A stretch of 64,000 bases of DNA from IMG/VR virus record IMGVR_UViG_3300038361_000164, positions 124,001-188,000 of that record. One strand, given 5' to 3'. Made by a program: the position numbers and the translations under genes. Position 1 is the first letter of the stretch, and every line of letters starts with the position of its first letter. The notes beneath the pieces are model-generated. The model ran no database searches. It was not told the DNA's origin and saw only the letters and a program-made list of their open reading frames with translations. Below are positions 2,565-62,851 of the stretch, piece by piece.

Positions 2565-3353
2565 CTACTTTTTCTTTATTTCATTTTCATAAAAGAATCT
2601 TAGATTTTCTTTCATCTCTTCTTCTTTCATTCTTTTTTTGCGTTTTGCAACTCGTACAACATGTTCTTCAGGATAGAGTTCTTCGACCTTGTCTGATTGC
2701 CAAAACTCGAAAGTTTCAACATCCATAACGGTTAATTTTCCGAACCATCCAGCGCCTGTATCAGTCATAACCAGGTTTGAAAAGAATGTTGGTTCGTCGC
2801 CGCCTGTTATTCCTGTAGTTGCTGTGTGTCCAACAAAAATAATTCTGTAGTTTTCAAACTTATGTCCTTGTTTTTCGTATATACGAGCAACATTGAGAAG
2901 AGTTCTATCCCACATTAAATTATATGTTGATTCTTTGGATATGGGGTATTTATGATGAAAACCGCCGTGCACATAAACATTATTAAGTTCGTCTATGTGG
3001 TATAGTTTAGTTTTATTCTCAAGAAAGTATCTATGTTTGTCTCTCCACTTGACTGGAGCCATTACATAGCTGGCTATTGTTTCATCTCCGCCTTGTTCTA
3101 GCCATAGCTCTGGAGCTTGTCCATATTGTAGCCAACCGAGCAGCCATGCGTCGTGATTACCCATAATGAATACTAAGTTTTTAATTTTTAGAAGTTCATT
3201 TATGCCCTCTGCTACATCGGACCAGCCATCGGCCGCGTCTCCTATAAATATAAGAGTATCGTTTTCATAGTCGAATTCACAGCGCTCCATGCATTGTTTA
3301 AATGCTTTGAGAGCTCCATGTAAATCGCCCATGACTAATGTTCTAGGTTTCAT
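2565..3353 (-). CDS. Calcineurin-like metallophosphoesterase (lambda NinI/PrpA-like)
   Basis: GDLHG, GDAAD, GNHD, HGG, GHT, DTGAG motifs. Confidence 0.9.
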   Translation of the reverse strand: MKPRTLVMGDLHGALKAFKQCMERCEFDYENDTLIFIGDAADGWSDVAEGINELLKIKNLVFIMGNHDAWLLGWLQYGQAPELWLEQGGDETIASYVMAPVKWRDKHRYFLENKTKLYHIDELNNVYVHGGFHHKYPISKESTYNLMWDRTLLNVARIYEKQGHKFENYRIIFVGHTATTGITGGDEPTFFSNLVMTDTGAGWFGKLTVMDVETFEFWQSDKVEELYPEEHVVRVAKRKKRMKEEEMKENLRFFYENEIKKK

Positions 3354-3764: not shown

Positions 3765-3790
3765 AGAATGGGCGGAATTCCGCCCGGAAT

Positions 3791-5720: not shown

Positions 5721-6221
5721 ATGAAAGTAAAATGTAAACAATGCACCAAAGAATTTGATAAAAGACCTAGTCAAATTAAAAGGACTAAAAATAATTTTTG
5801 TACACATAGTTGTGCAGCAATTTATAATAATCGAAAACATCCAAAACGAGTAGCAATATGTCTTTGCATAGTTTGTGGGTATAAAATAAGCCGTCAAAAT
5901 GCACATTGTCATGTTTGTAGAAGAAAAAAAGCTTTATCTTCTTTTAATGATGCTACAATTCAAGAAAAATTATATCATAAAAAAGGTCCTTGGAAATATA
6001 ATCCTATACGGCGTCGTGCAAAATCTGTGTTAGAACTTGAAAACCGTCCTAAAATTTGTGAAGACTGTGGTTGGGAGTCGCACGTGGAAATAGCGCATAT
6101 TCAACCAATTTCTACTTTTCCTTTAACTACCAAAATTGCCGAAGTTAATGCACCGACTAATTTGAAGTATTTGTGTCCCAATTGCCATTGGCTTTTAGAC
6201 CATTCAACTACTAAATTATAA
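5721..6221 (+). CDS. HNH endonuclease (homing-type) inserted antisense in tRNA array
   Basis: CxxC pairs; CEDCGW...EIAHI...NL..LCPNCHWLLD. Confidence 0.9.
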   Translation: MKVKCKQCTKEFDKRPSQIKRTKNNFCTHSCAAIYNNRKHPKRVAICLCIVCGYKISRQNAHCHVCRRKKALSSFNDATIQEKLYHKKGPWKYNPIRRRAKSVLELENRPKICEDCGWESHVEIAHIQPISTFPLTTKIAEVNAPTNLKYLCPNCHWLLDHSTTKL

Positions 6222-6377: not shown

Positions 6378-6450
6378 TGGCCGCAGGTGTGGGTTACTAC
6401 ACCACATTTCCCTCCTCAATGGAGGGGTCCTAGATTTAAACGAACCTGCG
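6378..6450 (-). pseudogene. Degenerate tRNA-like element (TTG anticodon-like loop)
   Basis: Perfect acceptor CGCAGGT/ACCTGCG, G73, CCA; abnormal T-loop and position 33. Confidence 0.65.
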
Positions 6451-6455
6451 TTAAT

Positions 6456-6525
6456 TGGCGGAGGAGTACAGGATCTTGAACCTGCGCAATCTGCTTTGGA
6501 AGGCAGACCTCCGGAGAACTCCCCC
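6456..6525 (-). pseudogene. Degenerate tRNA-like element (8-nt anticodon loop CTTCCAAA, reduced D-arm)
   Basis: Acceptor GGGGGAG/CTCCTCC, G73, CCA; T-arm GCAGG-TTCAAGAT-CCTGT. Confidence 0.65.
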
Positions 6526-6531
6526 TCTAAT

Positions 6532-6585
6532 TGGTCGCTCCCCTTCCCGTGCGCTATAATCACACAGTTGACGTCAGAGGAGCAA
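6532..6585 (-). pseudogene. Mini tRNA-like element (about 54 nt)
   Basis: TTGCTCCTC/GGGGAGCGA stem followed by CCA; one internal 5-bp/7-nt hairpin. Confidence 0.5.
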
Positions 6586-6591
6586 ACGTTA

Positions 6592-6689
6592 TGGCAGTTA
6601 GGGTAGGACTTGAACCTACATTTGCTACTAATCGCCAATGGTTTGCACCACCCGTTTTCACATATCCTAGTCTATTGGACGACCTAACT
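6592..6689 (-). pseudogene. Degenerate tRNA-like element (Ser-like, expanded centre)
   Basis: Acceptor AGTTAGG/CCTAACT, G73, CCA; T-arm GTAGG-TTCAAGT-CCTAC; no regular anticodon arm. Confidence 0.65.
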
Positions 6690-6695
6690 ATTATT

Positions 6696-6941: not shown

Positions 6942-6972
6942 TATGCACTCCTTGTTAATAAGTTATTGTTTG

Positions 6973-7047
6973 AGCGAATAGTGGAAGTCGAATCCACGAA
7001 CCTTAACTTTGGCAAAGTTACGCTCTGACCAGCTGAGCTATATTCGC
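6973..7047 (-). tRNA. tRNA-Gly(GCC)
   Basis: TAACT-TT-GCC-AA-AGTTA; U73. Confidence 0.95.
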
Positions 7048-7054
7048 ATTATTG

Positions 7055-7126
7055 AGCAACTAGAGGGAATCGAACCCTCATCGTCTGGGTGGAAGCCAGA
7101 AATCTTAGCCATTGGACCACAGTCGC
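7055..7126 (-). tRNA. tRNA-Gly(TCC)
   Basis: TCTGG-CT-TCC-AC-CCAGA; U73. Confidence 0.95.
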
Positions 7127-7160
7127 ATGTGGGCGGTCAAAGCCGCCCTATTTAAAAAAC

Positions 7161-7177
7161 TCACAATGTCAAAAAAC
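7161..7177 (-). promoter_or_regulatory. boxA-like antitermination element
   Basis: AGTTTTTTGACATTGTGA resembles rRNA/tRNA-operon boxA (AGTTCTTTGA.A) just upstream of the first tRNA. Confidence 0.45.
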
Positions 7178-7188
7178 TATAATTATAT

Positions 7189-7225
7189 AAAAAAAGCCCG
7201 GTTAGATCTCTCTTTGCCGGGCTTT
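7189..7225 (-). terminator. Intrinsic terminator (attenuator) upstream of tRNA array
   Basis: AAAGCCCGG...CCGGGCTTTTTTT hairpin plus U-tract. Confidence 0.85.
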
Positions 7226-7251
7226 AAAAAACTTATAAAATATTAAATTAT

Positions 7252-7362
7252 TTATAGCATAAAGCCCGTATTTTTAAAACGTTCTGCAGGTACACCATGC
7301 CCATTGGCCTGGGTAATACAGAGGCTTTGATAATCCGATAATCTTACTATAATATTATACAT
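7252..7362 (-). CDS. Putative attenuator leader peptide (36 aa, leaderless)
   Basis: MYNIIVRLSDYQSLCITQANGHGVPAERFKNTGFML; ATG at predicted TSS; last codons contain CGGGCTTT, complementary to the terminator 5' arm. Confidence 0.7.
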   Translation of the reverse strand: MYNIIVRLSDYQSLCITQANGHGVPAERFKNTGFML

Positions 7363-7367
7363 ATTTT

Positions 7368-7396
7368 ATAATACACCCTTATATGAGCGTTGTCAA
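7368..7396 (-). promoter_or_regulatory. Sigma70-like promoter of tRNA operon
   Basis: TTGACA-N17-(TG)TATTAT. Confidence 0.8.
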
Positions 7397-7410
7397 GTCT
7401 TTTTTCCCAA

Positions 7411-7757: not shown

Positions 7758-9494
7758 CTAGTTATTTTTTCTTGTTGACTTTTTTGTTGAGACCCGATAG
7801 AACTTGTGCCTTGTTAGCAACCCTACTCTATCACCCGATCTCGTCAACTTCAAATTCGTCGTTAAGTTTCTATGCTCTACAACTTTTCCTGCTGTACTGC
7901 CATCTTTTGGAAGAAGGGTTAGTTTGCCGTCTTCATGGAGATATACAAAAGGTGAGCTCTTTTTTTGCAGAGACACAAAGTTTAGTATTGATACCGTCGT
8001 AGGTTTAATTTGTACGTCCGTGGCATCATTTACATTCATATATAATACATATTCTTCAATACCGGTCTTCTTATTCATTGTTCGGAGCATACAAATACCA
8101 TTTTCGTACTTAGCATCTAATACTCGTCTATCCGTCAAATGTTCCGATATGAATGTTTTAATTATGTTATTTTTTTGGGGAAAATACAGATAATGTTTTT
8201 GTCCTATAAGTGAGTACAACATTCCATCAAACAGTTGTGTGGCTTGGGCCGCTACGTTTAAAGTTGTAGCCGACGCAACCATTGGTCCTGTTCTACCTTT
8301 GAAAAGTCGCATTAGTTGGAATTTATCATCTGTTTTTATGTATAATCGATTATCTATAATCATAATTTCGTCAGCTTTATATTTAGTATCAGAAATTGTT
8401 GACTGACCTAAGGTTCTTATATGCAAATGTGTGTTTTCAATAAACACTTCATAAGCTTTTTGATCTTGGATCGGGTCAATTAATATTCTAGAGTTCTTAT
8501 TTACTAAATCATATTCTTTTAAAGCTTTTGTGATAAAATCATATTGATATACTTTTTCTTTTGTTTGTAGATAATCATTTTCACTTGTTCCGTAGTGATG
8601 TGTAATAGTATGTGGTAGGGATACTAGCATTTGAACATAGAAGTTTTCGTTAGTAATAACCACCGGTTTGTCTTCAAACGTAAATGTGTGTTTGCCGATC
8701 ATTGGAGGTTCTAATCTTTCTCCCTTTTCAAACATTCTAATATACCATTCTTTGAGGTTGGGAGGAATAATAGCTAAATCTCTTACCGCTCCTGGTATTT
8801 TAGTGTCTTTGTTGAAAATGGATACGTTCGCTTTCATACGAGCTTCTAGTTGCTTTCTTCCAGCATACTGAGGATGTCTGCCCTTGTATGGGTGTAATCC
8901 TGTAAAAAGTTGACAGGATACTATTCCAAAAGAGAACCAATCTGTAAATTCAGAAAACTTAGAAGAATGATGATCTCTTATGTTGGGCATAATTACTGTT
9001 GCAGGATAACTTGGAGTCTGCCAAGCGTTTACATCAATAAAGTATGGTATCTGATAAGTTTTACTATCTACAAGATAATTCATCTCGTTGCCGTCAACCA
9101 TTAATACTTGTTGTGCATGTATATGCTTGATCGTGTGTTGCATTTCTTTTGTTAAAGCTACAATGTTGTCAACTGTGATATTATTCTTATCCCAAAAACT
9201 TGTAATAAATAATCGAGTCAAATACGTGAAATTCTTCACCCTATTTGTTGTGAACCCTATAGGCTTACCATGTCGATCTACTAACATATCTTTTGGAATA
9301 AATACATTTTTGTATTTTATTTTCTGTAACTCTCTGATCTTTTCTAATGAAATTACATCGGAGGGATTAATATAAATTTTGAATACTTCGTTGCCTTTAC
9401 CAAATACTCTGCCTTCGCCGCCTTCACCTAATAAATCACTGCTTTCATTTAGTTGAGTCGATTTTCCAGTCCGTTTATTTATTACTGTTGGCAT
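7758..9494 (-). CDS. Ser/Thr protein kinase (YegI/TerY-associated type)
   Basis: GEGGEGRV, FKIY, HAQQVLMVDGNEMN, IDV, TDWFSFG. Confidence 0.9.
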   Translation of the reverse strand: MPTVINKRTGKSTQLNESSDLLGEGGEGRVFGKGNEVFKIYINPSDVISLEKIRELQKIKYKNVFIPKDMLVDRHGKPIGFTTNRVKNFTYLTRLFITSFWDKNNITVDNIVALTKEMQHTIKHIHAQQVLMVDGNEMNYLVDSKTYQIPYFIDVNAWQTPSYPATVIMPNIRDHHSSKFSEFTDWFSFGIVSCQLFTGLHPYKGRHPQYAGRKQLEARMKANVSIFNKDTKIPGAVRDLAIIPPNLKEWYIRMFEKGERLEPPMIGKHTFTFEDKPVVITNENFYVQMLVSLPHTITHHYGTSENDYLQTKEKVYQYDFITKALKEYDLVNKNSRILIDPIQDQKAYEVFIENTHLHIRTLGQSTISDTKYKADEIMIIDNRLYIKTDDKFQLMRLFKGRTGPMVASATTLNVAAQATQLFDGMLYSLIGQKHYLYFPQKNNIIKTFISEHLTDRRVLDAKYENGICMLRTMNKKTGIEEYVLYMNVNDATDVQIKPTTVSILNFVSLQKKSSPFVYLHEDGKLTLLPKDGSTAGKVVEHRNLTTNLKLTRSGDRVGLLTRHKFYRVSTKKSTRKNN

Positions 9495-9807
9495 CTTTTT
9501 TAAATCTTTCTCTTAAGATTAGTAAATCATTTTCTGCCTTACTACGCTCTTCTATTAATAGTCTTTTCTGTTTAGCGACTAATTCAATTCTTGTGTCTAC
9601 ATCTATTAAATCGAGACTAATTGAGCTCAACTCGGGTCCATCTTTATCTCTTGTTAAAGCTTCTAATCCACAAATAGCACATTCATCTGAGTCCATACGT
9701 CTGTCGATAGTTTTTATACTCCATGTTATAGACTCTATAGCATTGATTAATTTATTTTGTTCTGCTACTTCTTTAATAATTTGTTTAAATTCTTTTGAAT
9801 TATGCAT
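9475..9807 (-). CDS. Hypothetical coiled-coil protein
   Basis: ORF track; overlaps both neighbours in operon. Confidence 0.55.
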   Translation of the reverse strand: MHNSKEFKQIIKEVAEQNKLINAIESITWSIKTIDRRMDSDECAICGLEALTRDKDGPELSSISLDLIDVDTRIELVAKQKRLLIEERSKAENDLLILRERFKKDANSNK

Positions 9808-10639
9808 CGCTTTTGATCTCCTTTATATTAAGGCTTACAATTGTAAAATCATCTTCAGGAAAGATGTTCTTTTTCTCAAAAAGAGTAAGCATTCGTTTCA
9901 TACGTCTTTGCATGAATGGTCCGTCATCTGATTTTAATGCGAGTATTTCGTCAGCTATCTTTGTAACATCAATTTTTTCTAAAGTAGCTTTGTTTACAAA
10001 ACTCGACATTCCATCAGTAATAAGGTGCATTCTTTTTACAGATTCGGAAGTACTGAAAATTGTATCAATTGCGCGTTTGTACCCTGTTCCTGTTCCCAAT
10101 GTTATCCATATGCCGTTTTCTTTCATGTACCACTTTTGATTTAAAGTACAAGGAGAGGAGAGTTCGTATTTCGAAGTTAAGTATATGGGATACATAGGTT
10201 TATTTTCATCATATGTCAACTCTTCCAGTATAACGGCTCCTGATGTATATTCTATCAGAATGTATCCATCACCTATATATTTTAATGCGTAGCTGGATGT
10301 TTTATTATCATAATATATGGCTAGAATTGTAGCTAATAGATCTTCCTTTTGTAGTCCAAGCGCCTCGTTATCTAACAATTCGGTCAATCCGTCCGTTAGT
10401 GCCATTTCAAATGTTCGAGGAAATCTAATAAATTCGTCTATATATTGTGCGGTTTTTAAGTACGTAGTTGCTAGCATACACATCATTCTAGATCCGATAC
10501 TAACTAGTCTTCCACTGGAGCATCCATCTGAGACAACAAGTAGTTTGGCATCTTCTAAAGATTCTACGTATGCGTAATCTTGATTGATCTTATGGGTGCT
10601 TCCTTTCGTACTAAATTTATCTATATTTGTTTGCTTCAT
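9800..10639 (-). CDS. PP2C-family phosphatase (YegK/TerY-P-like)
   Basis: G..H.INQDY, VVSDGCSS, IGDG, LITDG, EDDFT; start placed at MKQTNIDK. Confidence 0.9.
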   Translation of the reverse strand: MKQTNIDKFSTKGSTHKINQDYAYVESLEDAKLLVVSDGCSSGRLVSIGSRMMCMLATTYLKTAQYIDEFIRFPRTFEMALTDGLTELLDNEALGLQKEDLLATILAIYYDNKTSSYALKYIGDGYILIEYTSGAVILEELTYDENKPMYPIYLTSKYELSSPCTLNQKWYMKENGIWITLGTGTGYKRAIDTIFSTSESVKRMHLITDGMSSFVNKATLEKIDVTKIADEILALKSDDGPFMQRRMKRMLTLFEKKNIFPEDDFTIVSLNIKEIKSDA

Positions 10640-10655
10640 AATGTGTTTTGGAAAA

Positions 10656-10807
10656 AAGGTATTAGAATGGACAGGATTCGATACCTGCACGATGATTTTT
10701 TCGAGCTGTACATATTATTTCAATGCTATCATCGAACCACGACGTCAGCTGCCATGGATATTTGCTCTACTATTTGCGGCTATCTTTCGCCACCATTCTA
10801 ATACCTT
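10656..10807 (-). ncRNA. Candidate structured RNA closed by a 15-bp perfect stem with a T-arm-like hairpin
   Basis: AAGGTATTAGAATGG (10656-10670) / CCATTCTAATACCTT (10793-10807); CAGG-TATCGAAT-CCTG; CGATGAT/ATCATCG. Confidence 0.55.
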
Positions 10808-20471: not shown

Positions 20472-21266
20472 TTAGTCCGTCCTAATAAAAGACGGAGTAT
20501 TGTGTTTATGCTGAGTACTCGCAATTTGCGCTTCGACTTTTCGTTTTACATCTGGATGGTTGTACACCTGCCCAGCCAATTCCGGCACGTCGAGTAGTAG
20601 CTGTTTGTGTCGTAGATAAGCATCAATTTCCTCATAAGTAAGTCCAAGTTCGGTTTCATCTGTTTGTCCTTCCCAAAGATCTGCTGAAGGAGCTCTGCGG
20701 TAGATTTCATCTAAAAGTTGACCACTATCAAGATAATGTTGAGCCAATTGATAAATTTCTGTTTTTAAGAAATTAATGACTGGTTCAAAATCAGAAGCCT
20801 GATCTCCCCATTTGGTGCAATAACCTAATAGGTGTTCTGTCAAGTTTTCTGTACCGATTACTAAACAATTGCCGTGTGCGGCATAATCATACAAAGTAAT
20901 CATTCTTAAACGCGCTTTTATATTTCCCACACGAAGATTGTCCTGTGAATTATTGAAAGTTTCACATAATACATTTAATGCCTCATCAAGCTCTGCGTTC
21001 CAAATATGCATTTCTAAAAGGTTAGCTTGTTTTATAGCAAGTTCATGTGTTTGATACCTACCCATAGGCATAGATATTGCAAATACGTTATTCGTTCCTA
21101 AGGCTTCTGCACTTAAACAAGCTACCAAAGCAGAATCTATTCCGCCTGACAGTCCAAGCACAACTCCAGTTTTACCTGCATTTTTTACAGTCTCTTCGAT
21201 GAACCTTATTATTTTGTTTCGTTCATTCTTTTTTATCATTTGATTCCTTTCTTTAAAAGTCTCCAT
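20472..21266 (-). CDS. nadE: NH3-dependent NAD+ synthetase
   Basis: VLGLSGGIDS, NIKARLRM..LY, GTEN.TE..LGY.TKWGD, PSADLWEGQTDE.ELG. Confidence 0.95.
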   Translation of the reverse strand: METFKERNQMIKKNERNKIIRFIEETVKNAGKTGVVLGLSGGIDSALVACLSAEALGTNNVFAISMPMGRYQTHELAIKQANLLEMHIWNAELDEALNVLCETFNNSQDNLRVGNIKARLRMITLYDYAAHGNCLVIGTENLTEHLLGYCTKWGDQASDFEPVINFLKTEIYQLAQHYLDSGQLLDEIYRRAPSADLWEGQTDETELGLTYEEIDAYLRHKQLLLDVPELAGQVYNHPDVKRKVEAQIASTQHKHNTPSFIRTD

Positions 21267-22116
21267 AATTTACTTGTATACATGTAAGGCCTAGTTCTTT
21301 GCGCCACATGTCTACAACTTGTTGTCGGTCATCTACTACAAAGTCCACATAGTATTTACCACGAATGTTTTCTTCAAACATACGTTTCTTAACTATGGAA
21401 TCTTTTTCGTTGTTTACCGTTTCACGTATAAACATGTCTATGAACGGCACTTTTTGTCCATGTAACCAATCTTTTGTATCTATTTCACAAATATCATCTC
21501 TGCCTGTAAATATTATGATTGGCACTGTCAGTGCTTGTGCTATTTGTATGACTGGTTTATTTGGAAGATCGTCTTTGACTTTCGAGAAATCAAAAGAACC
21601 TCTGTCGCCTCTAAGGGCTAATGTTCCGTCTACGTCAAATATCACACAATGGGGTAATGATGGGTCCTCGTCATATATTACAGGTAGAGGTGCTAAGTAT
21701 CTGTTATAGAAACTCCATATTACTTTTTCTCCTGCAGAGTTTTTCCGAAGAAGATCGCGTCTAACACATTCTTCTGGAGATATATCAAGGAATTTTTTAT
21801 AACTAACTTTAAGTTCTTCTGTAATACCTTTAGCGATTAAAGCTTCTCTATAAAGAGCTATTTTTGCTTTGTTTACATTAACATCTAAATTAGTTGCATC
21901 AAGTATAACACTGAATCCTTGTGAGAAAGCGCTAAGTACACAAGTATTTTCCCATTCAGTAATAAGATCTTCTTGTTTAGGTATCCAATATACTCCTCGC
22001 ATATTTCTAAGTGCATCCCTGCTTACGCGAATGTAGTTTTTGTTTTTCTTACAGAACTCCTCTGCCCAAGTAGATTTACCACTAGCCGGAAGTCCCTGTA
22101 GTATTGTTAATTTCAT
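21253..22116 (-). CDS. pseT: Polynucleotide 5'-kinase/3'-phosphatase (T4 PseT-like)
   Basis: GLPASGKST, RD..R, DATN, FDVDGTL, TGR, DDRQQVVDMWR. Confidence 0.93.
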   Translation of the reverse strand: MKLTILQGLPASGKSTWAEEFCKKNKNYIRVSRDALRNMRGVYWIPKQEDLITEWENTCVLSAFSQGFSVILDATNLDVNVNKAKIALYREALIAKGITEELKVSYKKFLDISPEECVRRDLLRKNSAGEKVIWSFYNRYLAPLPVIYDEDPSLPHCVIFDVDGTLALRGDRGSFDFSKVKDDLPNKPVIQIAQALTVPIIIFTGRDDICEIDTKDWLHGQKVPFIDMFIRETVNNEKDSIVKKRMFEENIRGKYYVDFVVDDRQQVVDMWRKELGLTCIQVNYGDF

Positions 22117-23152
22117 GTTCCTCCATGAATGGTGTTTCGTGTTTTGGTTTTAAGTTTTTCCATATTAAAGGATCTAGACTTTCTAAATCCAACAGTTTAA
22201 ATAAATAAAATGTATATCCTTTCTTAGTCTTGGCCCACTCTGCAATTTCTTTTCTAGTGGCATATATTGGAGCCTCATCAAATATTTCATATACCTTTCC
22301 TTTAATTTCTTTAAACCTATCGGTAAGGCCTTTTTTAGTAAGTTTAACCCAATCATAGAATTCATCTGGTACGTTATTTAGGATTTCATTGAACTCAGTG
22401 CCATCTCGTAAATATTCCCAAATGAGCCTACTAGTAACTCCAGTTAATATTCTGTGCAATCTAACATATTCCTCAAATTTGATCTTCATCATGAAGTTGT
22501 TAGAAAATCGTATAACATATCCTTCTTTGTTACTAAAGTTTTGATTCTTTAAAGTTTGGAAGTCTGTATATTTATACTCTTTAGCGTGGTCAAATCCTTG
22601 TCCCCAAATACTTTTAAAGTCCCCAGTTTCGTTGTGTACCTTAGCTAACAACACTATATCGTCTTTACCTTCGTACGTTATGACAATTCTATTTTCTGGA
22701 TAAATTATTTCAAAAAGATATGTTGTTTCTCTGTTGAAGGTTTTCCATAGATGTCGGTGTCTTGTATGTAGAAGTCTAGTTGCATGCATAGCTTGTTCAG
22801 AATTAAAACTACCCCTTGTGGCTATAAATGGGGTATTTCCGATCCAGTACATGATGCCTAGAGAGCCATCTAACTTTTCTAATATGGTGTAGGACAAATT
22901 CGGTATTTCTTCTGCCGTATGCTCTTCCATATTAAAAAATTTAGGGAAAGGTCTAGATACGGTATTATAATCTTTATCTAATATCAATCCTCTGGCTATT
23001 CTAGTACATTCATTCCAGATACCTTCATACTGTGCTGATTTACTATAATTATATAGCCACAAATCCGCTGTTGGATGTTTTTGTACATTTATATATTTCT
23101 TATGTACCATGTCCAACAATAATACTACATTAATCTTCGTAGTCATCATCAT
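22082..23152 (-). CDS. RNA ligase 1 family (Rnl1/RnlA-like)
   Basis: EKLDGSLG, ATRGSF, FEIIYPENRIV, EGYVIRF, KIKFEEY..LHR. Confidence 0.9.
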   Translation of the reverse strand: MMMTTKINVVLLLDMVHKKYINVQKHPTADLWLYNYSKSAQYEGIWNECTRIARGLILDKDYNTVSRPFPKFFNMEEHTAEEIPNLSYTILEKLDGSLGIMYWIGNTPFIATRGSFNSEQAMHATRLLHTRHRHLWKTFNRETTYLFEIIYPENRIVITYEGKDDIVLLAKVHNETGDFKSIWGQGFDHAKEYKYTDFQTLKNQNFSNKEGYVIRFSNNFMMKIKFEEYVRLHRILTGVTSRLIWEYLRDGTEFNEILNNVPDEFYDWVKLTKKGLTDRFKEIKGKVYEIFDEAPIYATRKEIAEWAKTKKGYTFYLFKLLDLESLDPLIWKNLKPKHETPFMEEHEINNTTGTSG

Positions 23153-24443
23153 ATGTTCTCTTAAAACACAGGTACCAAAAGTATCCTGGGTATAAGTAGC
23201 ATTTAACAAATTCTTCTTTTGTGTTTACAATGTCGTTAAGAGAATCTGAATACGAATCATTTGTAAATGTTTTAGCTAAAATAATGATATAATATGCTAA
23301 TAAAAACATGATTCCTACTATGATTAAAAATATGAAAAAGCCGTGCATAGTGCTCCTTTCTTAAAGTTTTCCTTTTTTTACGCCCTCTTTTACTTGTGCT
23401 TCAGTTATGAAAAAGAAGGGCATTTTTTTAGAATTCATAACTGTCTCATAATTTGGTTTCATACCAAACTGTCGTTCAAGTTGAGACTCTATTTGTCTGT
23501 ACATAAAAGCTGCGCTTGGGCTATACATAAGATCTATATCTAACATAATGTCCCAAGTTTTGTACTTATCGCGTCCCTCGTATCGAACCATTTTTGTCAT
23601 AGTGGTAAGTTGGTTATGATTTTAAGAGTTTCTGTAGTTACTTTTCCGAAGTATGCTTTCACTGTTAAGCTTCCATCTGTGAGGTCATACCAAGACTCTG
23701 GAATCCCCCTAAGAGTATGAGTCAAATCGTATACTGTATTCTTTCCTGCTTTGCAGTATAGAAAAGACTCTCTTCGATCTCCTGGTGTTTCGATTTTAAA
23801 AGCCGTTCCAGGAGCTAAACTGTCGATCAACTCAAACCCTGTTAATTCTGATTGTGCCATCTATTCGTCTCCTATTAAGTCAGCCCAATCGCTTTCAAAT
23901 ATATCATCATTTTCTTTGTAATCCTTCTCAATACGATCCACTACTTCACCACGGATACTACCCTCGTCCATATGATCATAAGCCTTTTGTGCTAAACGCT
24001 CTCTGTTTTCTTCAGTATTTTTAGTATGTTCGGGTTCAGGTCCCGTAATAAACAGTTTTAAGGTGCGGCCGTCATCTTGAATGTCTGTAGTTATTACAAA
24101 CTTCTTCTTTGTCCAAAGAACATACTCTCTGCCAGGCGGATCGCCAGTACAGTGATTGATTACTTCCAACCTGTTAAAGTCTGTCATTGTTTTTGGAATC
24201 TGTTCTGTGTTGCTCATTTTAGTTTCCTGGTTATATGCCGTGTGTGAATTCCGATTCAAGTTCTTCGAAATCCATTTCTTCCAGCTCTGTGATTTTTTTT
24301 GCTCTTAAATAGTCTAAAGCTATTTCTATAATGTCTTCTTTCTTTACAAGTAATTCGCCGTGATCATTTACAATGTTGATTAGATCTGGGCTTTTCTTCA
24401 TAACTATGAAAGAAGTATTTCCCGATTTCGAAGTATAGGACAT
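23130..24443 (-). CDS. Cluster of five small hypothetical proteins (23130-23348, 23361-23600, 23597-23860, 23861-24259, 24231-24443)
   Basis: ORF track; tight overlaps including ATGA at 23597-23600. Confidence 0.55.
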
Positions 24444-56386: not shown

Positions 56387-57706
56387 ATGGCAATCGGAAT
56401 TCCGGATATCAAAATGTTTCGGGCTTTTCCGACTGTAAACAGTCCTCAAAAGGGAACTTTTAATATACAACTACATGAAGCGGATCGTGCAGGAAGACAT
56501 TACGACATTCGTATTGTTCTTCCTGGATCTTCTCATGCGTATTCCTGAGCTGCCAGAAAACTCCCAACATCTGGACAGAAGGTAATGGCCATCGAACAAC
56601 CAACTCACACGGAAAGCTATGTGGGTTGGTCTGGTACTATATCAAAAGGATATGGGAAAGGGACAGTGCGCTCAATTGTTAAAGAGCCAATCGAAGTCCT
56701 AGAAGCTACAGTAAATAAAGTTGTTTTTAACATATACACAGGAAACTCGGCAACTCGCTATCTACTAAAAAGAACTGGTGCGAAAGAATGGTTATGATAT
56801 AACTATACTCTTACCACAGATAATACCGCAATACCTACCAAAAAACCTTCCTATAAAGAAATAGAGTTCTCAGCCCTTACAACTCTAAATAAAGAAGAAG
56901 TACATTCTCCTAAATTAGACGGAGCACATAATATAATTCGATTGCGACCAGAAAAACGGATAGATATTTATTCTTATAGAAAAAGTAAAAAAGGAAAAGA
57001 GAGAATAGATCATACATATAAAACAGATTTGTATAAAATAAGATCGCCAAAAGAATTTGGTGACTCGGTTATTAGAGGTGAATTATATGTTCCCGGAAAA
57101 ACTTCTACGGAAACTGGATCTATTTTAAACTCGAACGTATGAAAAGCTAGAAAGAAACAACAAGAATCAAACAACTCTTTAGATATTAGGATTTATAATA
57201 TTGACACTTACAAAGGAAAAGATGTAAGCAAGAAACCTTATAGAGAAAAACTTTTAATGTTACAAGAGATTAGTCGTCGAATTCCTCAACTTAAAATGAT
57301 GGAATTAGCGCGTACACAAGGCGAAAAGTTAAAACTAATAGACCAGATCAAACACAAAAAACATAAGGAAACGGAGGAGGGAATTGTTGTATTTAATCTC
57401 AATAACCCTACACCTGTCAAAGCTAAAATAGCATCAGACTATGATGTGCTTATTACAGGAACATTTCCAGCAAAGCCTGGAACTAAATATCACGGAAACG
57501 CTATCGGCGGTTTTTTGGGACGACCAGAGAACAGTAACATTATTATTAGAATAGGTAGCGGCTTAACAGATCAGATTAGAAGAAGTGCTTATACTAATCC
57601 TGAAAAATACGCAGGACAGTGAGCAAAAGTAAAAGCTAACTCTAAATTAAAGAGTGGCAAATACCGTCATCCAAGATTTATTGAATGACGTTATGAAAAA
57701 TTTTAA
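56387..57706 (+). CDS. LigD-type 3'-phosphoesterase fused to ATP-dependent DNA ligase (439 aa; five TGA=Trp)
   Basis: H.....HYDIR, S*A (SWA), H...Y, GYGKG; ligase KLDG, RGELY, EEGIVV, GSG, RHPRFIE*R. Confidence 0.88.
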
Positions 57707-58301: not shown

Positions 58302-58928
58302 ATGGAATATAAACACCACGCATTAAAAACTTCAGTAGTAGGATTATCTGGCGCAGCCGATATTTTAATACCAGGACCTGTAGAAACTATACTTGCTGGG
58401 GCCTTGGCTCCAAAGGGTAAAAAGGTTAGAGCAAGCACTCTAGCCACAGCGGATTCAACTATAGGTTCTGTTCCTGGCTATACTGCGTTGGCTATTGCTA
58501 GTAAAGCTCCATTAAAAAAATGATTCAAGAAACAAGAAGGATTTAAAAGTGGAGTGAAAAATGCTTTTAGCTCTTTACGAAAACTTAAAGCGAAACAACT
58601 TTATAAAACATATAAAGGACCTCTTGCTTTATTAGGAATAGGAAGTGCTTTAGGAAGTGCGTATGGATATAATCGTGCTATAAAACAAGCAGAGTATGAC
58701 CCAACTTTAGAACGACAACTTCCTGGCTGAGATAATCATCTTCTCCAAGGAAGAAAAAGACTTCTCAATACTTCTAAGAAGCTATCAAGTGAATCTATTC
58801 GCGCGTTAGGTGACGAATGAATTTTTAGAAAACCACCTAAGGGCGTGCGTAAATTTGGATACACAGGACATATCTCTAAAAAAGCAGAAACAGTGTTCAA
58901 TAAAGTAAAGGAATGGCATAATGAATAA
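58302..58928 (+). CDS. Basic protein with Gly-rich hydrophobic segments (208 aa; three TGA=Trp)
   Basis: Frame open through TGA 58521, 58728, 58818 to TAA 58926-58928. Confidence 0.7.
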
Positions 58929-59988
58929 ATCAGAATATATTTTCACTAAAATTGCAAAAGAAAAATTAATGGATCTTTGAGCCAAACAAAATGTGCCAAT
59001 AGGCATGACAACCAAACAATGAAATGATGATTATAATTCTCAATGATATGATTATAGTGCAAAAAAGAAATCTACAGGTAGTAAATCTTTAATGGCTTTT
59101 GATAAAGAATATCGTTCTATGCATAAATATAACTTCACTGCAGCAGATCAAAAAAAATATGTAAGTCAATCGAGAAAACGAGCATTACTTACTGTAGGCA
59201 CTTTAGGTGCTGTAGGTGCTTTAGGAGGCTATTTGGTGACTAAAAAATTTAAAAAATTTGCCACAATAGGATCCACAAGAGGTGCAGCAATAGGAGCGGC
59301 AACCCTTGGAGGATTATCTGCCCTTTCGCAAGGAGCGCATGTACGCGGATCTTTTAAAGATTGACAAAAAAGTAATAAAAATAAATCTTTTAAAGCATAT
59401 ACAAAATCAGAACGTGGAAAAGGAACTATAAATCCTGCTTTAAAAGAAGTGGGGAGTAATTTTATGTGAGGAGGCTTATCTGGGGCTTACTTAGGTACTG
59501 GGTTTAGAAGAGCAACAAGTTATAAAGGCTATAAAGGCTATAAAGGCTATAAAGCTTCTACACATTCAGTAGATAGCTTATTAAAAACTTTTGGAGGAAC
59601 TAAAGGACAGTTCAAGACTAAAAAAGATGTAAACATGGCTTGAAGAAGTGCGGCTAAAAAATATCATCCAGATAGAAATCCAGGCAATATAAAAGCCGAA
59701 GCTAAAATGAAAAATATAAACAATGCGTATACAGAAGTAAAAACAACTGACTGGTTTAGCAAGCTTGCCGCGTTATATAAAGTAAGTGGGTCCATGGGTC
59801 AGAAAAGGTTAAATAGATTAGGAGGGCACACAGTTAAACAACTTCAGGCGCTAACCAAAGCAATGAAGGCCGGAAAATTGACTCCTAAGGAAGGAGGAGC
59901 TTTACATGCGAAGATAATGAGAAAACTTCATCCGACACTTCAAAAAATAAATTATAAACTTCAAAAAGGAATAGATAAACTTCCATAA
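58921..59988 (+). CDS. Leader + glycine-zipper + J-domain protein (355 aa; six TGA=Trp)
   Basis: MNKSEYIFTKIA; A*RSAAKKYHPDRNPGN..AEAKMKNINNAY (HPD motif). Confidence 0.82.
59521..59556 (+). repeat. (TATAAAGGC)3 tandem repeat encoding YKGYKGYKGYKA
   Basis: Directly visible, in frame, upstream of the J-domain. Confidence 0.9.
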
Positions 59989-61394: not shown

Positions 61395-61905
61395 AGCAGA
61401 AATATTATTTGAGAAATTAGCCACTAAATTGGGTTTTATGAGGAAGGGGTTTTTTTCCCACACAACAAGTAGAAGCGCTTTATCGAATATTCTATCTTCA
61501 GGTAAAATAAAAACAGGCAGATCATTAGGAAAAGCAGGACAAGGTTTTAGAAACATGGATGATATGGTTCCTGACAGTTTTAATGAGTATGTAAGTACTG
61601 GAAAAAATACTATCTATACCTCTGGAAAAAGATTTAGAGCTATATTAATGAAATCTCCGAAAAATGAAGTAAGTAATTTAGGAAAAGAATCTTTACTTAA
61701 AGGAGATGTCGCATTAAGTTTAAAAAATACACGAGTCGCAGTACCAGCTAACAGACTTTCAGGTTACCAAAAAAAGTATCCTAAGTATAAATTTATAGCA
61801 TCTGAAGATATAAAAACTAAAAGAATAACAAAGTACCAACCAAATAAAGAAGTACAGGAAGGTATCAACTGGGGTGAATTAAACCAAGCATTTGGTAATT
61901 ATTAA
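61384..61905 (+). CDS. Basic protein with leader; possible ADP-ribosyltransferase fold
   Basis: (V)QSKAEILFEKLA; FSHTTS..AL..ILSSGKI resembles the HxT/IL..G strand of DarT/Tpt1-like ARTs. Confidence 0.6.
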   Translation: MQSKAEILFEKLATKLGFMRKGFFSHTTSRSALSNILSSGKIKTGRSLGKAGQGFRNMDDMVPDSFNEYVSTGKNTIYTSGKRFRAILMKSPKNEVSNLGKESLLKGDVALSLKNTRVAVPANRLSGYQKKYPKYKFIASEDIKTKRITKYQPNKEVQEGINWGELNQAFGNY

Positions 61906-61912
61906 AATAGAT

Positions 61913-62851
61913 ATGGCAGATAACCCTTCAATAGTAGATCATTTTAGATACGGTAAGCGTCTTGTTAGACACAAGTATTTCATGCTTGGCCCAGGAAGAC
62001 AGTTAGGGGTGCCATACAGCACACTTCTTGCCCACGACCTGTCAAAGTTTAGACCAAGTGAATGGGGCTCTTATGTGAAGTATTGGCACGGTCCAAAAGG
62101 TATAACTGGGACAAGAGATCCAGAAGTATATAGAAAATTTAGAGAAGCGGCATCGCTTCACTACAAACGAAATCCACATCACGGTCATAAGATCAACGTG
62201 GAACAAAAGCGTAAGCATCAATTAGAAGCAGTAACAGATTGGTATGCAACAACGAAAGCGAATCAGCCTAGTGCTAAAAACTTTCCTAGCTTTGGCACAT
62301 GGGTCAGAAAACATAATTCGACTGCTAGAAAGAAATTAATGGAACTAGGAGTAGACACGGAGAAATTAGCAATGCAAGATAAAGCAACATACGTATTTGA
62401 GAAGCTAGCAGGAGCCAAATGATCGCCCCTTTCACCATATAAATTTAATAAGTTTATACGTAATCGTTTTGGAGAGAAGCTTCTGCTAAAGTCATTTGAA
62501 ACTTCTAACAAACTTTGACCTCAGGATGTTAATACTTTACATGCCTATAAAACTTTTAAACGTATGGTAGCAGATGTTAATAATGTTAGAACGATTAAAG
62601 ATGCTAGAAAAGTAAATAAAACTTGATCAGACAATGTATGAAGGAAAAATCAAGACTTGGTAGCCCCAGGAAGAAGAAACAGCATAGAAGAGGTATTAAT
62701 GGAAAGAACATTAATTACTCCTCTCGGGAAGAAAGAAGGCTTACCTATTAATAGGAATGTATTAACAACGAAGTTAGAGAAAAACATACCCTCTAAACTT
62801 CAGAAACAATCTTTAAGACTTATATTTAATAATAAATATAGTAAAAATTAA
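61913..62851 (+). CDS. DUF5662-like HD domain fused to a second leader-bearing domain (four TGA=Trp)
   Basis: HK...HDLSK...E...H..RNPHH...DW; internal EKLAMQDKATYVFEKLA; open through TGA 62420, 62516, 62624, 62639. Confidence 0.7.

What the first reader, a model, noticed from the sequence alone, without database searches (positions are those of the whole stretch)
7131..7396. Attenuator with a 19-amino-acid leader peptide controlling the phage tRNA array
Seen: on the minus strand, a TTGACA-N17-TATTAT promoter places the TSS at the ATG (7362) of a leaderless 36-codon ORF, MYNIIVRLSDYQSLCITQANGHGVPAERFKNTGFML. Its first 30 codons contain 19 of the 20 amino acids and 26 different codons. The only missing residue is Trp, the residue involved in this phage's recoding. 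Its last codons contain CGGGCTTT (7268-7261), complementary to the 5' arm (AAAGCCCG) of an intrinsic terminator (7225-7189). A boxA-like element, a hairpin and the first tRNA follow. Established: trp/his-type attenuation uses this geometry but with runs of one amino acid. Inference: a ribosome reaching the stop masks the antiterminator and transcription terminates. Stalling on almost any depleted or cleaved tRNA frees it and switches on phage tRNA synthesis, making this a general tRNA-starvation sensor against anticodon-nuclease defences.
Basis: partly seen in the sequence, partly recalled or inferred. Interest (0 to 1): 0.92.

Follow-up and report, generated by a model that had tools for sequence, protein, structure and literature searches.

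The report
Possible translation-sensing attenuator before phage tRNAs
A near-consensus promoter, a 36-codon mini-gene that starts at the first transcribed base and a strong terminator sit at the entrance of a large phage's roughly 24-kb tRNA region, laid out like a classic ribosome-read attenuator; the phage has no known relatives, so a switch that turns tRNA genes on when translation falters is plausible but untested.

Summary
The sequence features are real. There is a TTGACA-N17-TATTAT promoter, the best match in 64 kb. An ATG lies 5 nt after it and opens a 36-codon ORF. A 9-nt stretch in the ORF's last codons can pair with the 5' arm of a strong terminator (-16 kcal/mol, 7 U). A hairpin and tRNA-Gly follow. 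The boxA claim fails.

Folding supports a three-state attenuator. The antiterminator forms (P about 0.93-0.96) in the nascent RNA unless a ribosome sits on codons 30 to stop. Only 5 of 1500 shuffles, and none of nine other terminator-like hairpins in the window, reproduce this geometry.

The "19 amino acids = universal tRNA sensor" reading is not supported. One such ORF is expected among the window's 177 small ORFs. Only 17 residue types lie where a stall could act (P=0.07), and Lys lies outside that stretch. The codons are not tuned to the phage's tRNAs, and codon usage looks non-coding.

The region controlled is at least 29 tRNAs plus many genes over about 24 kb.

No relative exists in any collection searched, so conservation and covariation cannot be tested.

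Best reading, at about 0.4: a leaderless leader-peptide attenuator that senses overall translation. Rivals are a stand-alone small RNA, a factor-dependent antitermination gate, and an ordinary operon-end terminator.

The parts
7391..7396 (-). -35 hexamer TTGACA
   Evidence: Together with the -10 it scores 11/12, the best promoter match in the window.
7368..7373 (-). -10 hexamer TATTAT, 17 nt after the -35
7360..7362 (-). ATG 5 nt after the -10; the presumed transcription start is at A7362 (leaderless). G7360 is an equally plausible start, and a transcript starting there would lack the AUG.
   Evidence: The sequence is shown. The choice of start site is inference from the usual spacing between the -10 and the start and the usual preference for a purine; it was not measured.
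7354..7359 (-). Perfect TATAAT at +4 to +9 of the predicted transcript; possibly a sigma70-dependent promoter-proximal pause element
   Evidence: The chance of a perfect TATAAT within 15 start positions is about 0.012. The function is inferred.
7252..7362 (-). 36-codon ORF plus TAA (MYNIIVRLSDYQSLCITQANGHGVPAERFKNTGFML). It has no Shine-Dalgarno sequence on a transcript that starts at the ATG.
   Evidence: Some gene callers call it in other assemblies. Its codon-usage score of 0.32 is at the 1.2th percentile of real-gene windows. It has no homologue among 1.84 billion representatives.
7252..7352 (-). Long imperfect hairpin (transcript nt 11-111) that partly sequesters the antiterminator strand; it would act as an anti-antiterminator
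   Evidence: -27.6 kcal/mol, z = -1.8, 9 of 200 shuffles as stable. The barrier from this hairpin to the antiterminator state is about 13.7 kcal/mol.
7260..7268 (-). Antiterminator 5' strand CGGGCTTTA (nt 95-103), within codons 32-35 of the ORF
   Evidence: a 9-nt perfect complement to 7226-7218. A complement of at least 9 nt appears in 1/600 shuffles.
7227..7259 (-). A/U-rich spacer that forms the loop of the antiterminator and contains the stop codon
   Evidence: the antiterminator region including an inner A/U hairpin folds at -13.3 kcal/mol.
7189..7226 (-). Intrinsic terminator. 5' arm 7225-7217, GAGA-capped inner stem, 3' arm 7201-7193, run of 7 T at 7195-7189. T7226 plus 7225-7218 form the antiterminator 3' strand.
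   Evidence: -15.9/-16.1 kcal/mol. It is one of only two strong minus-strand terminators in window 1-34 kb.
7130..7147 (-). GC hairpin GGGCGG-CTTTGA-CCGCCC, 4 nt before the tRNA 5' end
   Evidence: The same hairpin type precedes tRNA-Pro at 3786-3771.
7054..7126 (-). tRNA-Gly(UCC), the first gene of the tRNA region
6972..7047 (-). tRNA-Gly(GCC). The region continues downstream past window position 1, with at least 29 tRNAs over about 24 kb.

Best explanation
This is a ribosome-read transcription attenuator at the entrance of the phage's tRNA/ORF region.

Shown:
- A near-consensus sigma70-type promoter is followed about 170 nt later by a strong intrinsic terminator.
- The terminator's 5' arm has a perfect 9-nt alternative partner 35 nt upstream, inside the last codons of a 36-codon ORF whose ATG lies at the predicted transcription start.

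Inferred mechanism:
- The 5'-terminal AUG recruits a 70S ribosome.
- If the ribosome runs to codons 30-36 or the stop, it covers nt 95-103. The terminator then forms and a roughly 170-nt RNA is released.
- If the ribosome is held anywhere in about codons 2-29, it opens the long hairpin and leaves nt 95-103 free to pair with nt 137-145. This delays terminator formation, and RNA polymerase reads on into the tRNA genes.
- With no ribosome at all, the pre-formed long hairpin probably persists and termination follows, as with trp superattenuation.

The device would therefore report overall translation speed or capacity. It would give feedback between translation and phage tRNA supply. It would not be a sensor designed for 19 separate tRNAs.
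For: - Promoter quality and uniqueness. Over the roughly 45 kb checked downstream, this is the only strong promoter and the only strong terminator at the head of the tRNA region.
- Masked folds: in the nascent 160-nt RNA the antiterminator is present for A-site codons 2-29 and absent for codons 30-37.
- Pairing probabilities: P(antiterminator) is 0.93-0.96 at 146-165 nt, and P(terminator) is 0.94-0.96 at 170 nt or more.
- Barriers: 13.7 kcal/mol from hairpin to antiterminator and 9.6 kcal/mol from antiterminator to terminator.
- The 9-nt complement is rare in shuffles.
- An ATG-ORF of at least 30 codons that starts at nt 1-3 and ends near the terminator occurs in 0.5% of shuffles.
- The composite geometry occurs in 5/1500 shuffles.
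- Nine other terminator-like hairpins in the window have ddG of 0 to -4.2 kcal/mol against -7.3 here, and none has the stop-codon overlap.
- Leaderless leader-peptide attenuators are documented (PMC6614838, PMC11857589, PMC4007540).
- Attenuators that sense general ribosome stalling exist, for example bmrB-bmrCD (PMC4191407).
Against: - This is a single sequence. Nine other assemblies of the same phage are 100% identical over 861 nt, and no relative exists, so there is no conservation or covariation evidence.
- The transcription start is unmeasured. G7360, 8 nt after the -10 and preceded by T, is at least as likely as A7362 on general start-site rules (my knowledge), and a transcript starting there would remove the AUG.
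- The phage's genes normally use an AAGGA-type Shine-Dalgarno sequence.
- Codon usage of the ORF is like that of spurious ORFs.
- On an energy measure alone, 16% of shuffles engage the terminator's 5' arm as strongly.
- The thresholds of the composite test were set after seeing the real values.
- A single head-end gate for 24 kb is questionable, because at least one further TTGACA-type promoter sits just before tRNA-Leu(UAG).
- The terminator also has an ordinary job, ending the upstream 6-kb operon.
Confidence: 0.42

Rival explanations
1. Stand-alone small RNA gene. The promoter and terminator delimit a structured, non-coding RNA of about 170 nt: a long hairpin, an A/U-rich single strand, a terminator hairpin and a U tail. 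It shares its terminator with the upstream operon, like sRNAs of the 3'-UTR type. The ORF and the 9-nt repeat are incidental. The tRNAs are made by leak-through or from unrecognised promoters.
For: A promoter plus a terminator 50-400 nt apart is the classic sRNA gene signature. The fold z-score is -2.6 to -3.2. Codon usage is non-coding-like. The peptide has no homologue. There is no Shine-Dalgarno sequence. The terminator is also the first strong one after the operon that begins near 13.5 kb.
Against: It must write off the ORF-plus-antiterminator geometry as chance (5/1500 shuffles; 0/9 control terminators). No Rfam family matches even at E<=10 beyond terminator-driven noise. It leaves the 24-kb tRNA region without a recognisable strong promoter.
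Confidence: 0.2
2. Factor-dependent antitermination gate of the lambda PR'-tR' kind. RNA polymerase starts at a strong promoter and pauses at the -10-like TATAAT at +4 to +9. It terminates about 170 nt downstream unless a phage protein makes it terminator-resistant. This would time expression of the long downstream region.
For: A perfect TATAAT lies in the initial transcribed region (P about 0.012). A strong promoter is followed by a terminator at about +170 and then a co-directional region of more than 24 kb. In T4, extension of early transcripts into later genes is a known control layer (PMC2988021).
Against: No Q-like or N-like protein was recognised among the roughly 28 window proteins and fragments scanned; the gene just upstream has no family hit at all. 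No boxA or nut-like element is present. There are no further strong terminators downstream that would call for processive antitermination. It does not explain the 9-nt alternative pairing.
Confidence: 0.12
3. The leader was selected to contain nearly every amino acid, so that depletion or cleavage of almost any tRNA by anticodon nucleases stalls the ribosome and switches on phage tRNA synthesis.
For: It inherits all the evidence for the attenuator geometry. A count of 19/30 residue types is nominally a 0.3-0.7% event. The genome carries the tRNA-repair pair Rnl1 plus Pnkp and a near-complete tRNA set, which fits pressure from tRNA-targeting defences.
Against: One such ORF is expected among the window's 177 small ORFs. 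Only 17 residue types lie in the stall-effective codons 2-29 (P=0.068). The only Lys codon is codon 30, where a stall masks the antiterminator, yet tRNA-Lys is the classic anticodon-nuclease target (my knowledge). Ala and Arg codons in the leader have no phage tRNA among those found, and codon coverage by phage tRNAs is 79% against 86% genome-wide. Any random 30-codon leader already holds about 15 residue types.
Confidence: 0.12
4. Ordinary arrangement with coincidences. The terminator simply ends the upstream kinase/phosphatase operon, the promoter is an unrelated early promoter, and the ORF, the repeat and the diversity are chance. Alternatively, the ORF is a genuine 36-residue protein gene.
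For: The terminator is one of only two strong minus-strand terminators, and the two bracket a 6-kb operon. The energy-based antiterminator test is not significant (p=0.16). The finding was selected after the fact from 64 kb.
Against: A consensus promoter placed 170 nt upstream of, and firing into, the operon-end terminator is an odd layout. The joint geometry is rare. For the small-protein reading, codon usage is at the 1.2th percentile of real genes and there are no homologues.
Confidence: 0.14

Closest known systems
Leader-peptide transcription attenuators of amino-acid operons (E. coli trp, his, leu, thr, ilv, pheA)
   Same: A promoter-proximal intrinsic terminator, a short upstream ORF, mutually exclusive anti-antiterminator, antiterminator and terminator helices, and a stop codon next to the antiterminator strand. 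The stop-to-U-tract distance here is about 60 nt, which by my knowledge of trp is of the same order (not checked with a tool here).
   Different: There is no run of regulatory codons (no residue occurs more than three times). There is no Shine-Dalgarno sequence, so translation would have to be leaderless. It controls tRNA genes and assorted phage genes rather than a biosynthetic operon, and it lies in a phage.
Leaderless leader-peptide attenuators (S. meliloti trpL/rnTrpL, PMC6614838; C. glutamicum ilvBNC, PMC11857589; predicted ones in Deinococcus deserti, PMC4007540)
   Same: The transcription start coincides with the AUG of the leader peptide, and a first hairpin acts as an anti-antiterminator.
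   Different: Those leaders carry codons for the cognate amino acids and regulate biosynthesis or synthetase genes. Here the start site is only predicted.
Attenuators that sense ribosome stalling (B. subtilis bmrB-bmrCD, PMC4191407; vmlR, msrD leaders)
   Same: They read out general slowing of a ribosome on an upstream ORF rather than shortage of one amino acid, and a stall favours the antiterminator.
   Different: Those respond to ribosome-targeting antibiotics, have Shine-Dalgarno-led upstream ORFs and control resistance genes.
Lambda PR'-qut-tR' (the 6S RNA unit) with Q antitermination
   Same: A strong promoter, a -10-like element in the first transcribed bases, a terminator less than 200 nt downstream and a long co-directional operon beyond it.
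   Different: No Q-like gene was recognised, and the upstream neighbour is an orphan protein. Lambda has no competing antiterminator helix or upstream ORF.
T4 tRNA gene cluster (PMC2330249, citing Broida and Abelson 1985)
   Same: A phage tRNA cluster transcribed from a promoter just upstream, as a polycistronic precursor that also carries a homing-endonuclease gene (segB there; an HNH gene at 5721-6221 here).
   Different: That source describes no promoter-proximal terminator or leader ORF for T4. The region here is more than ten times longer.
T-box riboswitch
   Same: It is the same concept: an antiterminator/terminator switch that reports tRNA status.
   Different: There is no Rfam T-box hit even at E<=10 and no antiterminator bulge to pair with a tRNA 3' end. 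Sensing here would be through the ribosome.

Membership tests
Leader-peptide (ribosome-mediated) transcription attenuator | Intrinsic terminator between the promoter and the first regulated gene | tested here: met
   The hairpin is -15.9/-16.1 kcal/mol with 7 U, about 170 nt after the promoter and 63 nt before tRNA-Gly.
Leader-peptide (ribosome-mediated) transcription attenuator | Short ORF in the leader with a working translation start | tested here: inconclusive
   The 36-codon ORF is present. It has no Shine-Dalgarno sequence on the promoter's own transcript, and an AUG is present only if the start is A7362, which was not measured. Its codon usage is non-coding-like.
Leader-peptide (ribosome-mediated) transcription attenuator | Mutually exclusive antiterminator and terminator helices, chosen by ribosome position | tested here: met
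   This is an in-silico result only. The antiterminator has P 0.93-0.96 in nascent RNA and is abolished by a footprint at codons 30 to stop; the terminator has P 0.95 at full length. The geometry is rare in shuffles and in control terminators.
Leader-peptide (ribosome-mediated) transcription attenuator | Cluster of regulatory codons for the sensed amino acid(s) | tested here: not met
   There is no run. There are 19 residue types in 30 codons, and no residue occurs more than three times in the ORF.
Leader-peptide (ribosome-mediated) transcription attenuator | Conservation of the ORF and covariation of the helices in relatives | not testable with these tools
   No relatives were found. Neighbouring proteins match only themselves and so does the peptide. 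Nine other assemblies are identical.
Lambda-type Q antitermination unit (PR'-qut-tR') | -10-like pause element in the initial transcribed region plus a promoter-proximal terminator | tested here: met
   TATAAT lies at +4 to +9 and the terminator at about +138 to +174. Pausing itself was not tested.
Lambda-type Q antitermination unit (PR'-qut-tR') | Q-family antiterminator gene, usually just upstream | tested here: not met
   The upstream 109-aa protein has no Pfam, PHROG or PDB hit. No Q family appeared among the roughly 28 window proteins and fragments scanned. The rest of the 210-kb genome was not examined.
N/nut or rrn-type boxA antitermination | boxA sequence next to a hairpin on the transcript | tested here: not met
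   There is no match to TGCTCTTTAACAA with up to 3 mismatches in 7127-7190.
T-box riboswitch or other Rfam leader/riboswitch | Match to the family covariance model | tested here: not met
   No family reaches its gathering score. The best hits in 7130-7400 score no more than 21 bits and are driven by the terminator.
Independent sRNA gene | Own promoter and intrinsic terminator 50-400 nt apart, with a stable fold | tested here: met
   These features do not tell an sRNA gene from a cis-acting leader.

The most novel reading that the evidence does not exclude
A leaderless 36-codon upstream ORF works as a general translation-stress sensor. It opens a roughly 24-kb phage region encoding at least 29 tRNAs, including an amber-suppressor tRNA, whenever ribosomes stall. 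That would couple phage tRNA supply, and possibly the onset of translation of the phage's recoded (TGA-sense) genes, to the state of the host's tRNA pool, including attack by tRNA-cleaving defences.
Probability: 0.12. Interest if true: 0.85.

Novelty: new variant of a known kind. Interest (0 to 1): 0.6.

Why it matters
How phages regulate their own tRNA genes is largely unknown, and interest in phage tRNAs has grown since they were shown to counter tRNA-targeting defences (for example PMC11555353). A leader-peptide attenuator in front of tRNA genes would be a direct feedback loop from translation speed to tRNA supply. It would extend a textbook mechanism from amino-acid operons to the translation machinery itself, and to a virus. 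In my two literature searches on this point I found no report of such a device. The element is small, about 270 bp, and can be tested in reporters or cell-free systems even though the phage is uncultured. If it instead proves to be a small RNA or a factor-dependent gate, it still marks the main control point of an unusually large tRNA region.

Tried and rejected
- Relatives. The search for related loci in IMG/VR with the kinase, the 109-aa, 227-aa, 262-aa and 329-aa proteins returned only the source contig, plus one 34%-identical kinase locus (L002) with no tRNAs nearby.
- The 5.8-billion-protein search found no homologue of the 109-aa or 81-aa neighbours, and the best kinase match is 37% identical.
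- An exhaustive HMMER search with the 36-aa peptide found only itself; the two other hits are long repetitive proteins.
- Nine other assemblies of the same phage are identical over 861 nt.
- tblastn against isolate phages: the best Pnkp match is 38% identical, and the 691-aa protein has no match.
- blastn hits were to tRNA genes only. The 735-kb phage LR756501 shares similarity in its Gly tRNA genes but has no similar leader.
- The pattern CGGGCTTT...AAAGCCCG...CGGGCTTT in IMG/VR gave 21 loci; apart from the source contig, none carries a tRNA gene (one has a tmRNA).
- A metagenome scan with the 5' 24-mer of tRNA-Gly gave 0 hits. The second metagenome scan and the genome-contig scan were not used, because no pattern promised more than chance hits.
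- Rfam gave nothing for the leader.
- boxA was rejected.
- An 8-mer enrichment search for a phage-specific promoter motif in intergenic DNA found only tRNA T-loop words.
- My impression by eye that the 109-aa protein is Hsp20-like was not borne out by Pfam or PDB searches and is dropped.
- A second promoter downstream of the terminator was considered: TATAAT at 7187-7182 has no -35, and TTGACA at 7172-7167 has no -10. It was rejected as unsupported.
Full report
**Source and context**

The window is part of a 210-kb IMG/VR contig (IMGVR_UViG_3300038361_000164; window position = contig position minus 124,000). It has 36% G+C, and positions 1-34 kb are almost all minus-strand genes. The finding lies between an orphan 109-aa gene (7740-7411) and tRNA-Gly(UCC) (7126-7054).

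Nearby on the same strand are:
- a Ser/Thr-kinase-like gene and a PP2C phosphatase;
- the tRNA-repair pair Rnl1 and Pnkp, and an NAD synthetase;
- a NinI-like phosphatase;
- a NADAR-domain protein.

**The observation**

- TTGACA (7396-7391), a 17-nt spacer and TATTAT (7373-7368);
- ATG at 7362;
- a 36-codon ORF ending at TAA 7254-7252, with 19 residue types and 26 different codons in its first 30 codons;
- CGGGCTTT at 7268-7261;
- a terminator at 7225-7189;
- a GC hairpin at 7147-7130, then the tRNA.

The promoter is one of three 11/12 matches on both strands of the window. It is the only intergenic one with a perfect -35 and 17-nt spacing. The terminator (-16 kcal/mol, 7 U) is one of only two strong minus-strand terminators in 1-34 kb. 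The boxA-like element is not there.

**What "the tRNA array" really is**

Two further loci from the same contig reach downstream of window position 1. They show at least 29 tRNA genes spread over about 24 kb and interspersed with many ORFs, including an HNH endonuclease gene. The tRNAs cover 18 amino acids plus a tRNA(CUA).

Over the roughly 45 kb examined in the direction of transcription, the promoter at 7396 is the only 11/12 promoter. The terminator right behind it is the only strong canonical one. A weaker TTGACA-16-TAGCAT site sits just before tRNA-Leu(UAG). Whatever this element is, it sits at the main entrance of that region. All transcription arriving from upstream must pass the terminator.

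**Is the amino-acid diversity meaningful?**

- A count of 19 types in 30 residues occurs in 0.3% of 30-residue stretches of the phage's long ORFs, in 0.3% of random draws, and (for 19 or more) in 0.66% of shuffles of the ORF.
- The window contains 177 ATG-ORFs of 30-60 codons. About 0.5-1 such case is therefore expected, and exactly one is seen. Four of the 177 contain a 19-type stretch somewhere.
- In the codons where a stall could matter (2-29, see below) there are 17 types, P=0.068.
- The only Lys codon is codon 30.
- Phage tRNAs can read 22 of 28 leader codons (79%) against 86% of codons in long ORFs.
- The codon-usage score of the ORF (0.32) is at the 1.2th percentile of real-gene stretches, and 31% of the window's small ORFs score at least as high.

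The diversity argument, the distinctive part of the interpretation, therefore has no statistical or functional support.

**Does the RNA behave like an attenuator?**

Numbering the transcript from A7362:
- The full transcript folds into a long imperfect hairpin (nt 11-111) plus the terminator (nt 138-170).
- The segment nt 95-103 (CGGGCUUUA) is a perfect 9-nt complement of nt 137-145, and the antiterminator region folds at -13.3 kcal/mol against -15.9 for the terminator.
- At transcript lengths of 146-165 nt the antiterminator helix has probability 0.92-0.96. From 170 nt the terminator has 0.94-0.96.
- With a ribosome footprint imposed, the antiterminator is in the minimum-energy fold of the nascent RNA for A-site codons 2-29. 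It is absent for codons 30-37.
- Direct-path barrier estimates are 13.7 kcal/mol from the long hairpin to the antiterminator state and 9.6 kcal/mol from the antiterminator to the terminator.

My inference from those rough figures is as follows. An untranslated transcript stays in the hairpin and terminates. A formed antiterminator could hold for about the time RNA polymerase needs to clear the U tract. This is the three-state logic of trp-type attenuators.

**Is that geometry more than chance?**

- Contiguous complement to the terminator arm: at least 9 nt in 1/600 and at least 8 nt in 8/600 dinucleotide-preserving shuffles. On an energy measure (ddG -7.3 kcal/mol), however, 16% of shuffles do as well.
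- An ATG-ORF of at least 20 codons ending near the terminator occurs in 14% of shuffles. One of at least 30 codons starting at nt 1-3 occurs in 0.5%.
- Composite test: an ORF of at least 20 codons, plus at least 6 partner bases of the terminator arm under the footprint of a ribosome at that ORF's stop, plus ddG of -7 or lower. This occurs in 5/1500 shuffles, and in 1/1500 with the ORF starting at nt 1-3. The thresholds were chosen after seeing the real values, so the true figure is somewhat higher.
- Nine other terminator-like hairpins in the window give ddG of 0 to -4.2 kcal/mol, and none reproduces the overlap.
- The long hairpin alone is marginal (z = -1.8).

**Weak points of the ribosome model**

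- The transcription start is only predicted. The A of the ATG is the 6th base after the -10, and G7360 is the 8th. Both follow a T. General start-site preferences (my knowledge) do not favour A7362, and a start at G7360 removes the AUG.
- The phage's genes generally carry an AAGGA-type Shine-Dalgarno sequence, and the ORF has none on its own transcript.
- Leaderless leader peptides are nevertheless documented in S. meliloti, C. glutamicum and D. deserti (PMC6614838, PMC11857589, PMC4007540). The layout therefore has precedent.

**Comparative evidence is unobtainable**

- The 109-aa, 81-aa, 227-aa, 262-aa and 329-aa neighbours and the 36-aa peptide match only themselves.
- The best kinase match is 37% identical, and its closest phage locus has no tRNAs nearby.
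- Nine other assemblies are identical over 861 nt.
- Isolate phages are no closer than 38% identity in Pnkp.
- A metagenome scan found nothing.
- Rfam has no family for the leader.

**Rivals**

- A stand-alone small RNA that shares the upstream operon's terminator fits the promoter, the terminator, the fold and the non-coding codon usage. It must treat the ORF-plus-antiterminator geometry as coincidence.
- A lambda PR'-tR'-like gate is suggested by a perfect TATAAT at +4 to +9 (P about 0.012). No Q-like or N-like factor or boxA was found.
- The terminator may simply close the 6-kb upstream operon, with the remaining features being chance.

**Verdict**

The features are real and the attenuator layout is unlikely to be accidental. 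The best single explanation is a leaderless leader-peptide attenuator that senses overall translation, at about 0.42. The stand-alone small RNA is at about 0.2, an ordinary terminator with coincidences at about 0.14, and the antitermination gate at about 0.12.

If the best explanation is true, this is a new variant of a known mechanism. It is new in that it controls tRNA genes, lies in a phage, and has no regulatory codon run.

Noticed in passing
window 56798-57619 (+); also 58302-59988 and 61883-62851 (+): TGA is read as a sense codon in some plus-strand genes. Two ORF pieces split by a single in-frame TGA (57140-57142) hit consecutive parts (241-316 and 318-475) of the ATP-dependent DNA ligase PHROG. 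Neighbouring ORFs carry 3-6 in-frame TGAs and almost no TGG. The minus-strand genes around the leader use the standard code. Which amino acid TGA encodes was not determined.
   Followed up: partly
L036 12325-12399 (same contig, downstream of window position 1): The tRNA region encodes a tRNA with anticodon CUA, an amber suppressor that ARAGORN labels Pyl. No tRNA(UCA) was found in the 81 kb examined, although the recoded codon seen is TGA. This mismatch is unexplained. A tRNA-Trp(CCA) lies at L036 18393-18468.
   Followed up: no
window 6380-6690 (-): A roughly 300-nt non-coding stretch holds two tRNA-like elements that default ARAGORN does not call. One is at 6524-6460 (Rfam tRNA 25.3 bits, below threshold; a D arm without a loop; an 8-nt anticodon loop CUUCCAAA). 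The other is a 98-nt element at 6689-6592 with a good acceptor and T arm ending in CCA but an odd anticodon region.
   Followed up: partly
window 7130-7147 and 3771-3786 (-): The same GGGCGG-loop-CCGCCC hairpin sits 4-5 nt before the mature 5' ends of tRNA-Gly(UCC) and tRNA-Pro, and nowhere else in about 45 kb. It may be a processing or stabilising signal.
   Followed up: partly
window 7354-7359 (-): A perfect TATAAT lies at +4 to +9 of the predicted transcript (chance about 1.2%). It is a candidate sigma70-dependent promoter-proximal pause element, and it also supplies codons 2-3 of the ORF.
   Followed up: partly
window 1-23209 (-) and L035/L036: The tRNA region is far larger than the window shows: at least 29 tRNAs over about 24 kb, interleaved with ORFs. 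On the same strand in and around it are Rnl1 (22082-23209), Pnkp (21253-22116), NAD synthetase (20472-21266), a NADAR protein (2003-2458), a NinI-like phosphatase (2565-3353), and a kinase (7758-9494) with a PP2C phosphatase (9800-10690). Together these look like a translation-maintenance and counter-defence block.
   Followed up: partly
L035 18025-18062: A second TTGACA-type promoter (TTGACA-16-TAGCAT) lies directly in front of tRNA-Leu(UAG). This suggests internal promoters within the tRNA region.
   Followed up: no
window 5721-6221 (+): An HNH endonuclease gene lies on the opposite strand inside the tRNA region. This recalls the homing endonucleases in the T4 and T5 tRNA clusters (PMC2330249).
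   Followed up: no
window 7758-9494 (-): The closest homologues of the kinase-like protein (30-37% identity) include proteins from Beggiatoa, Candidatus Venteria and Desulfonema. This is a weak hint about the host or habitat.
   Followed up: no
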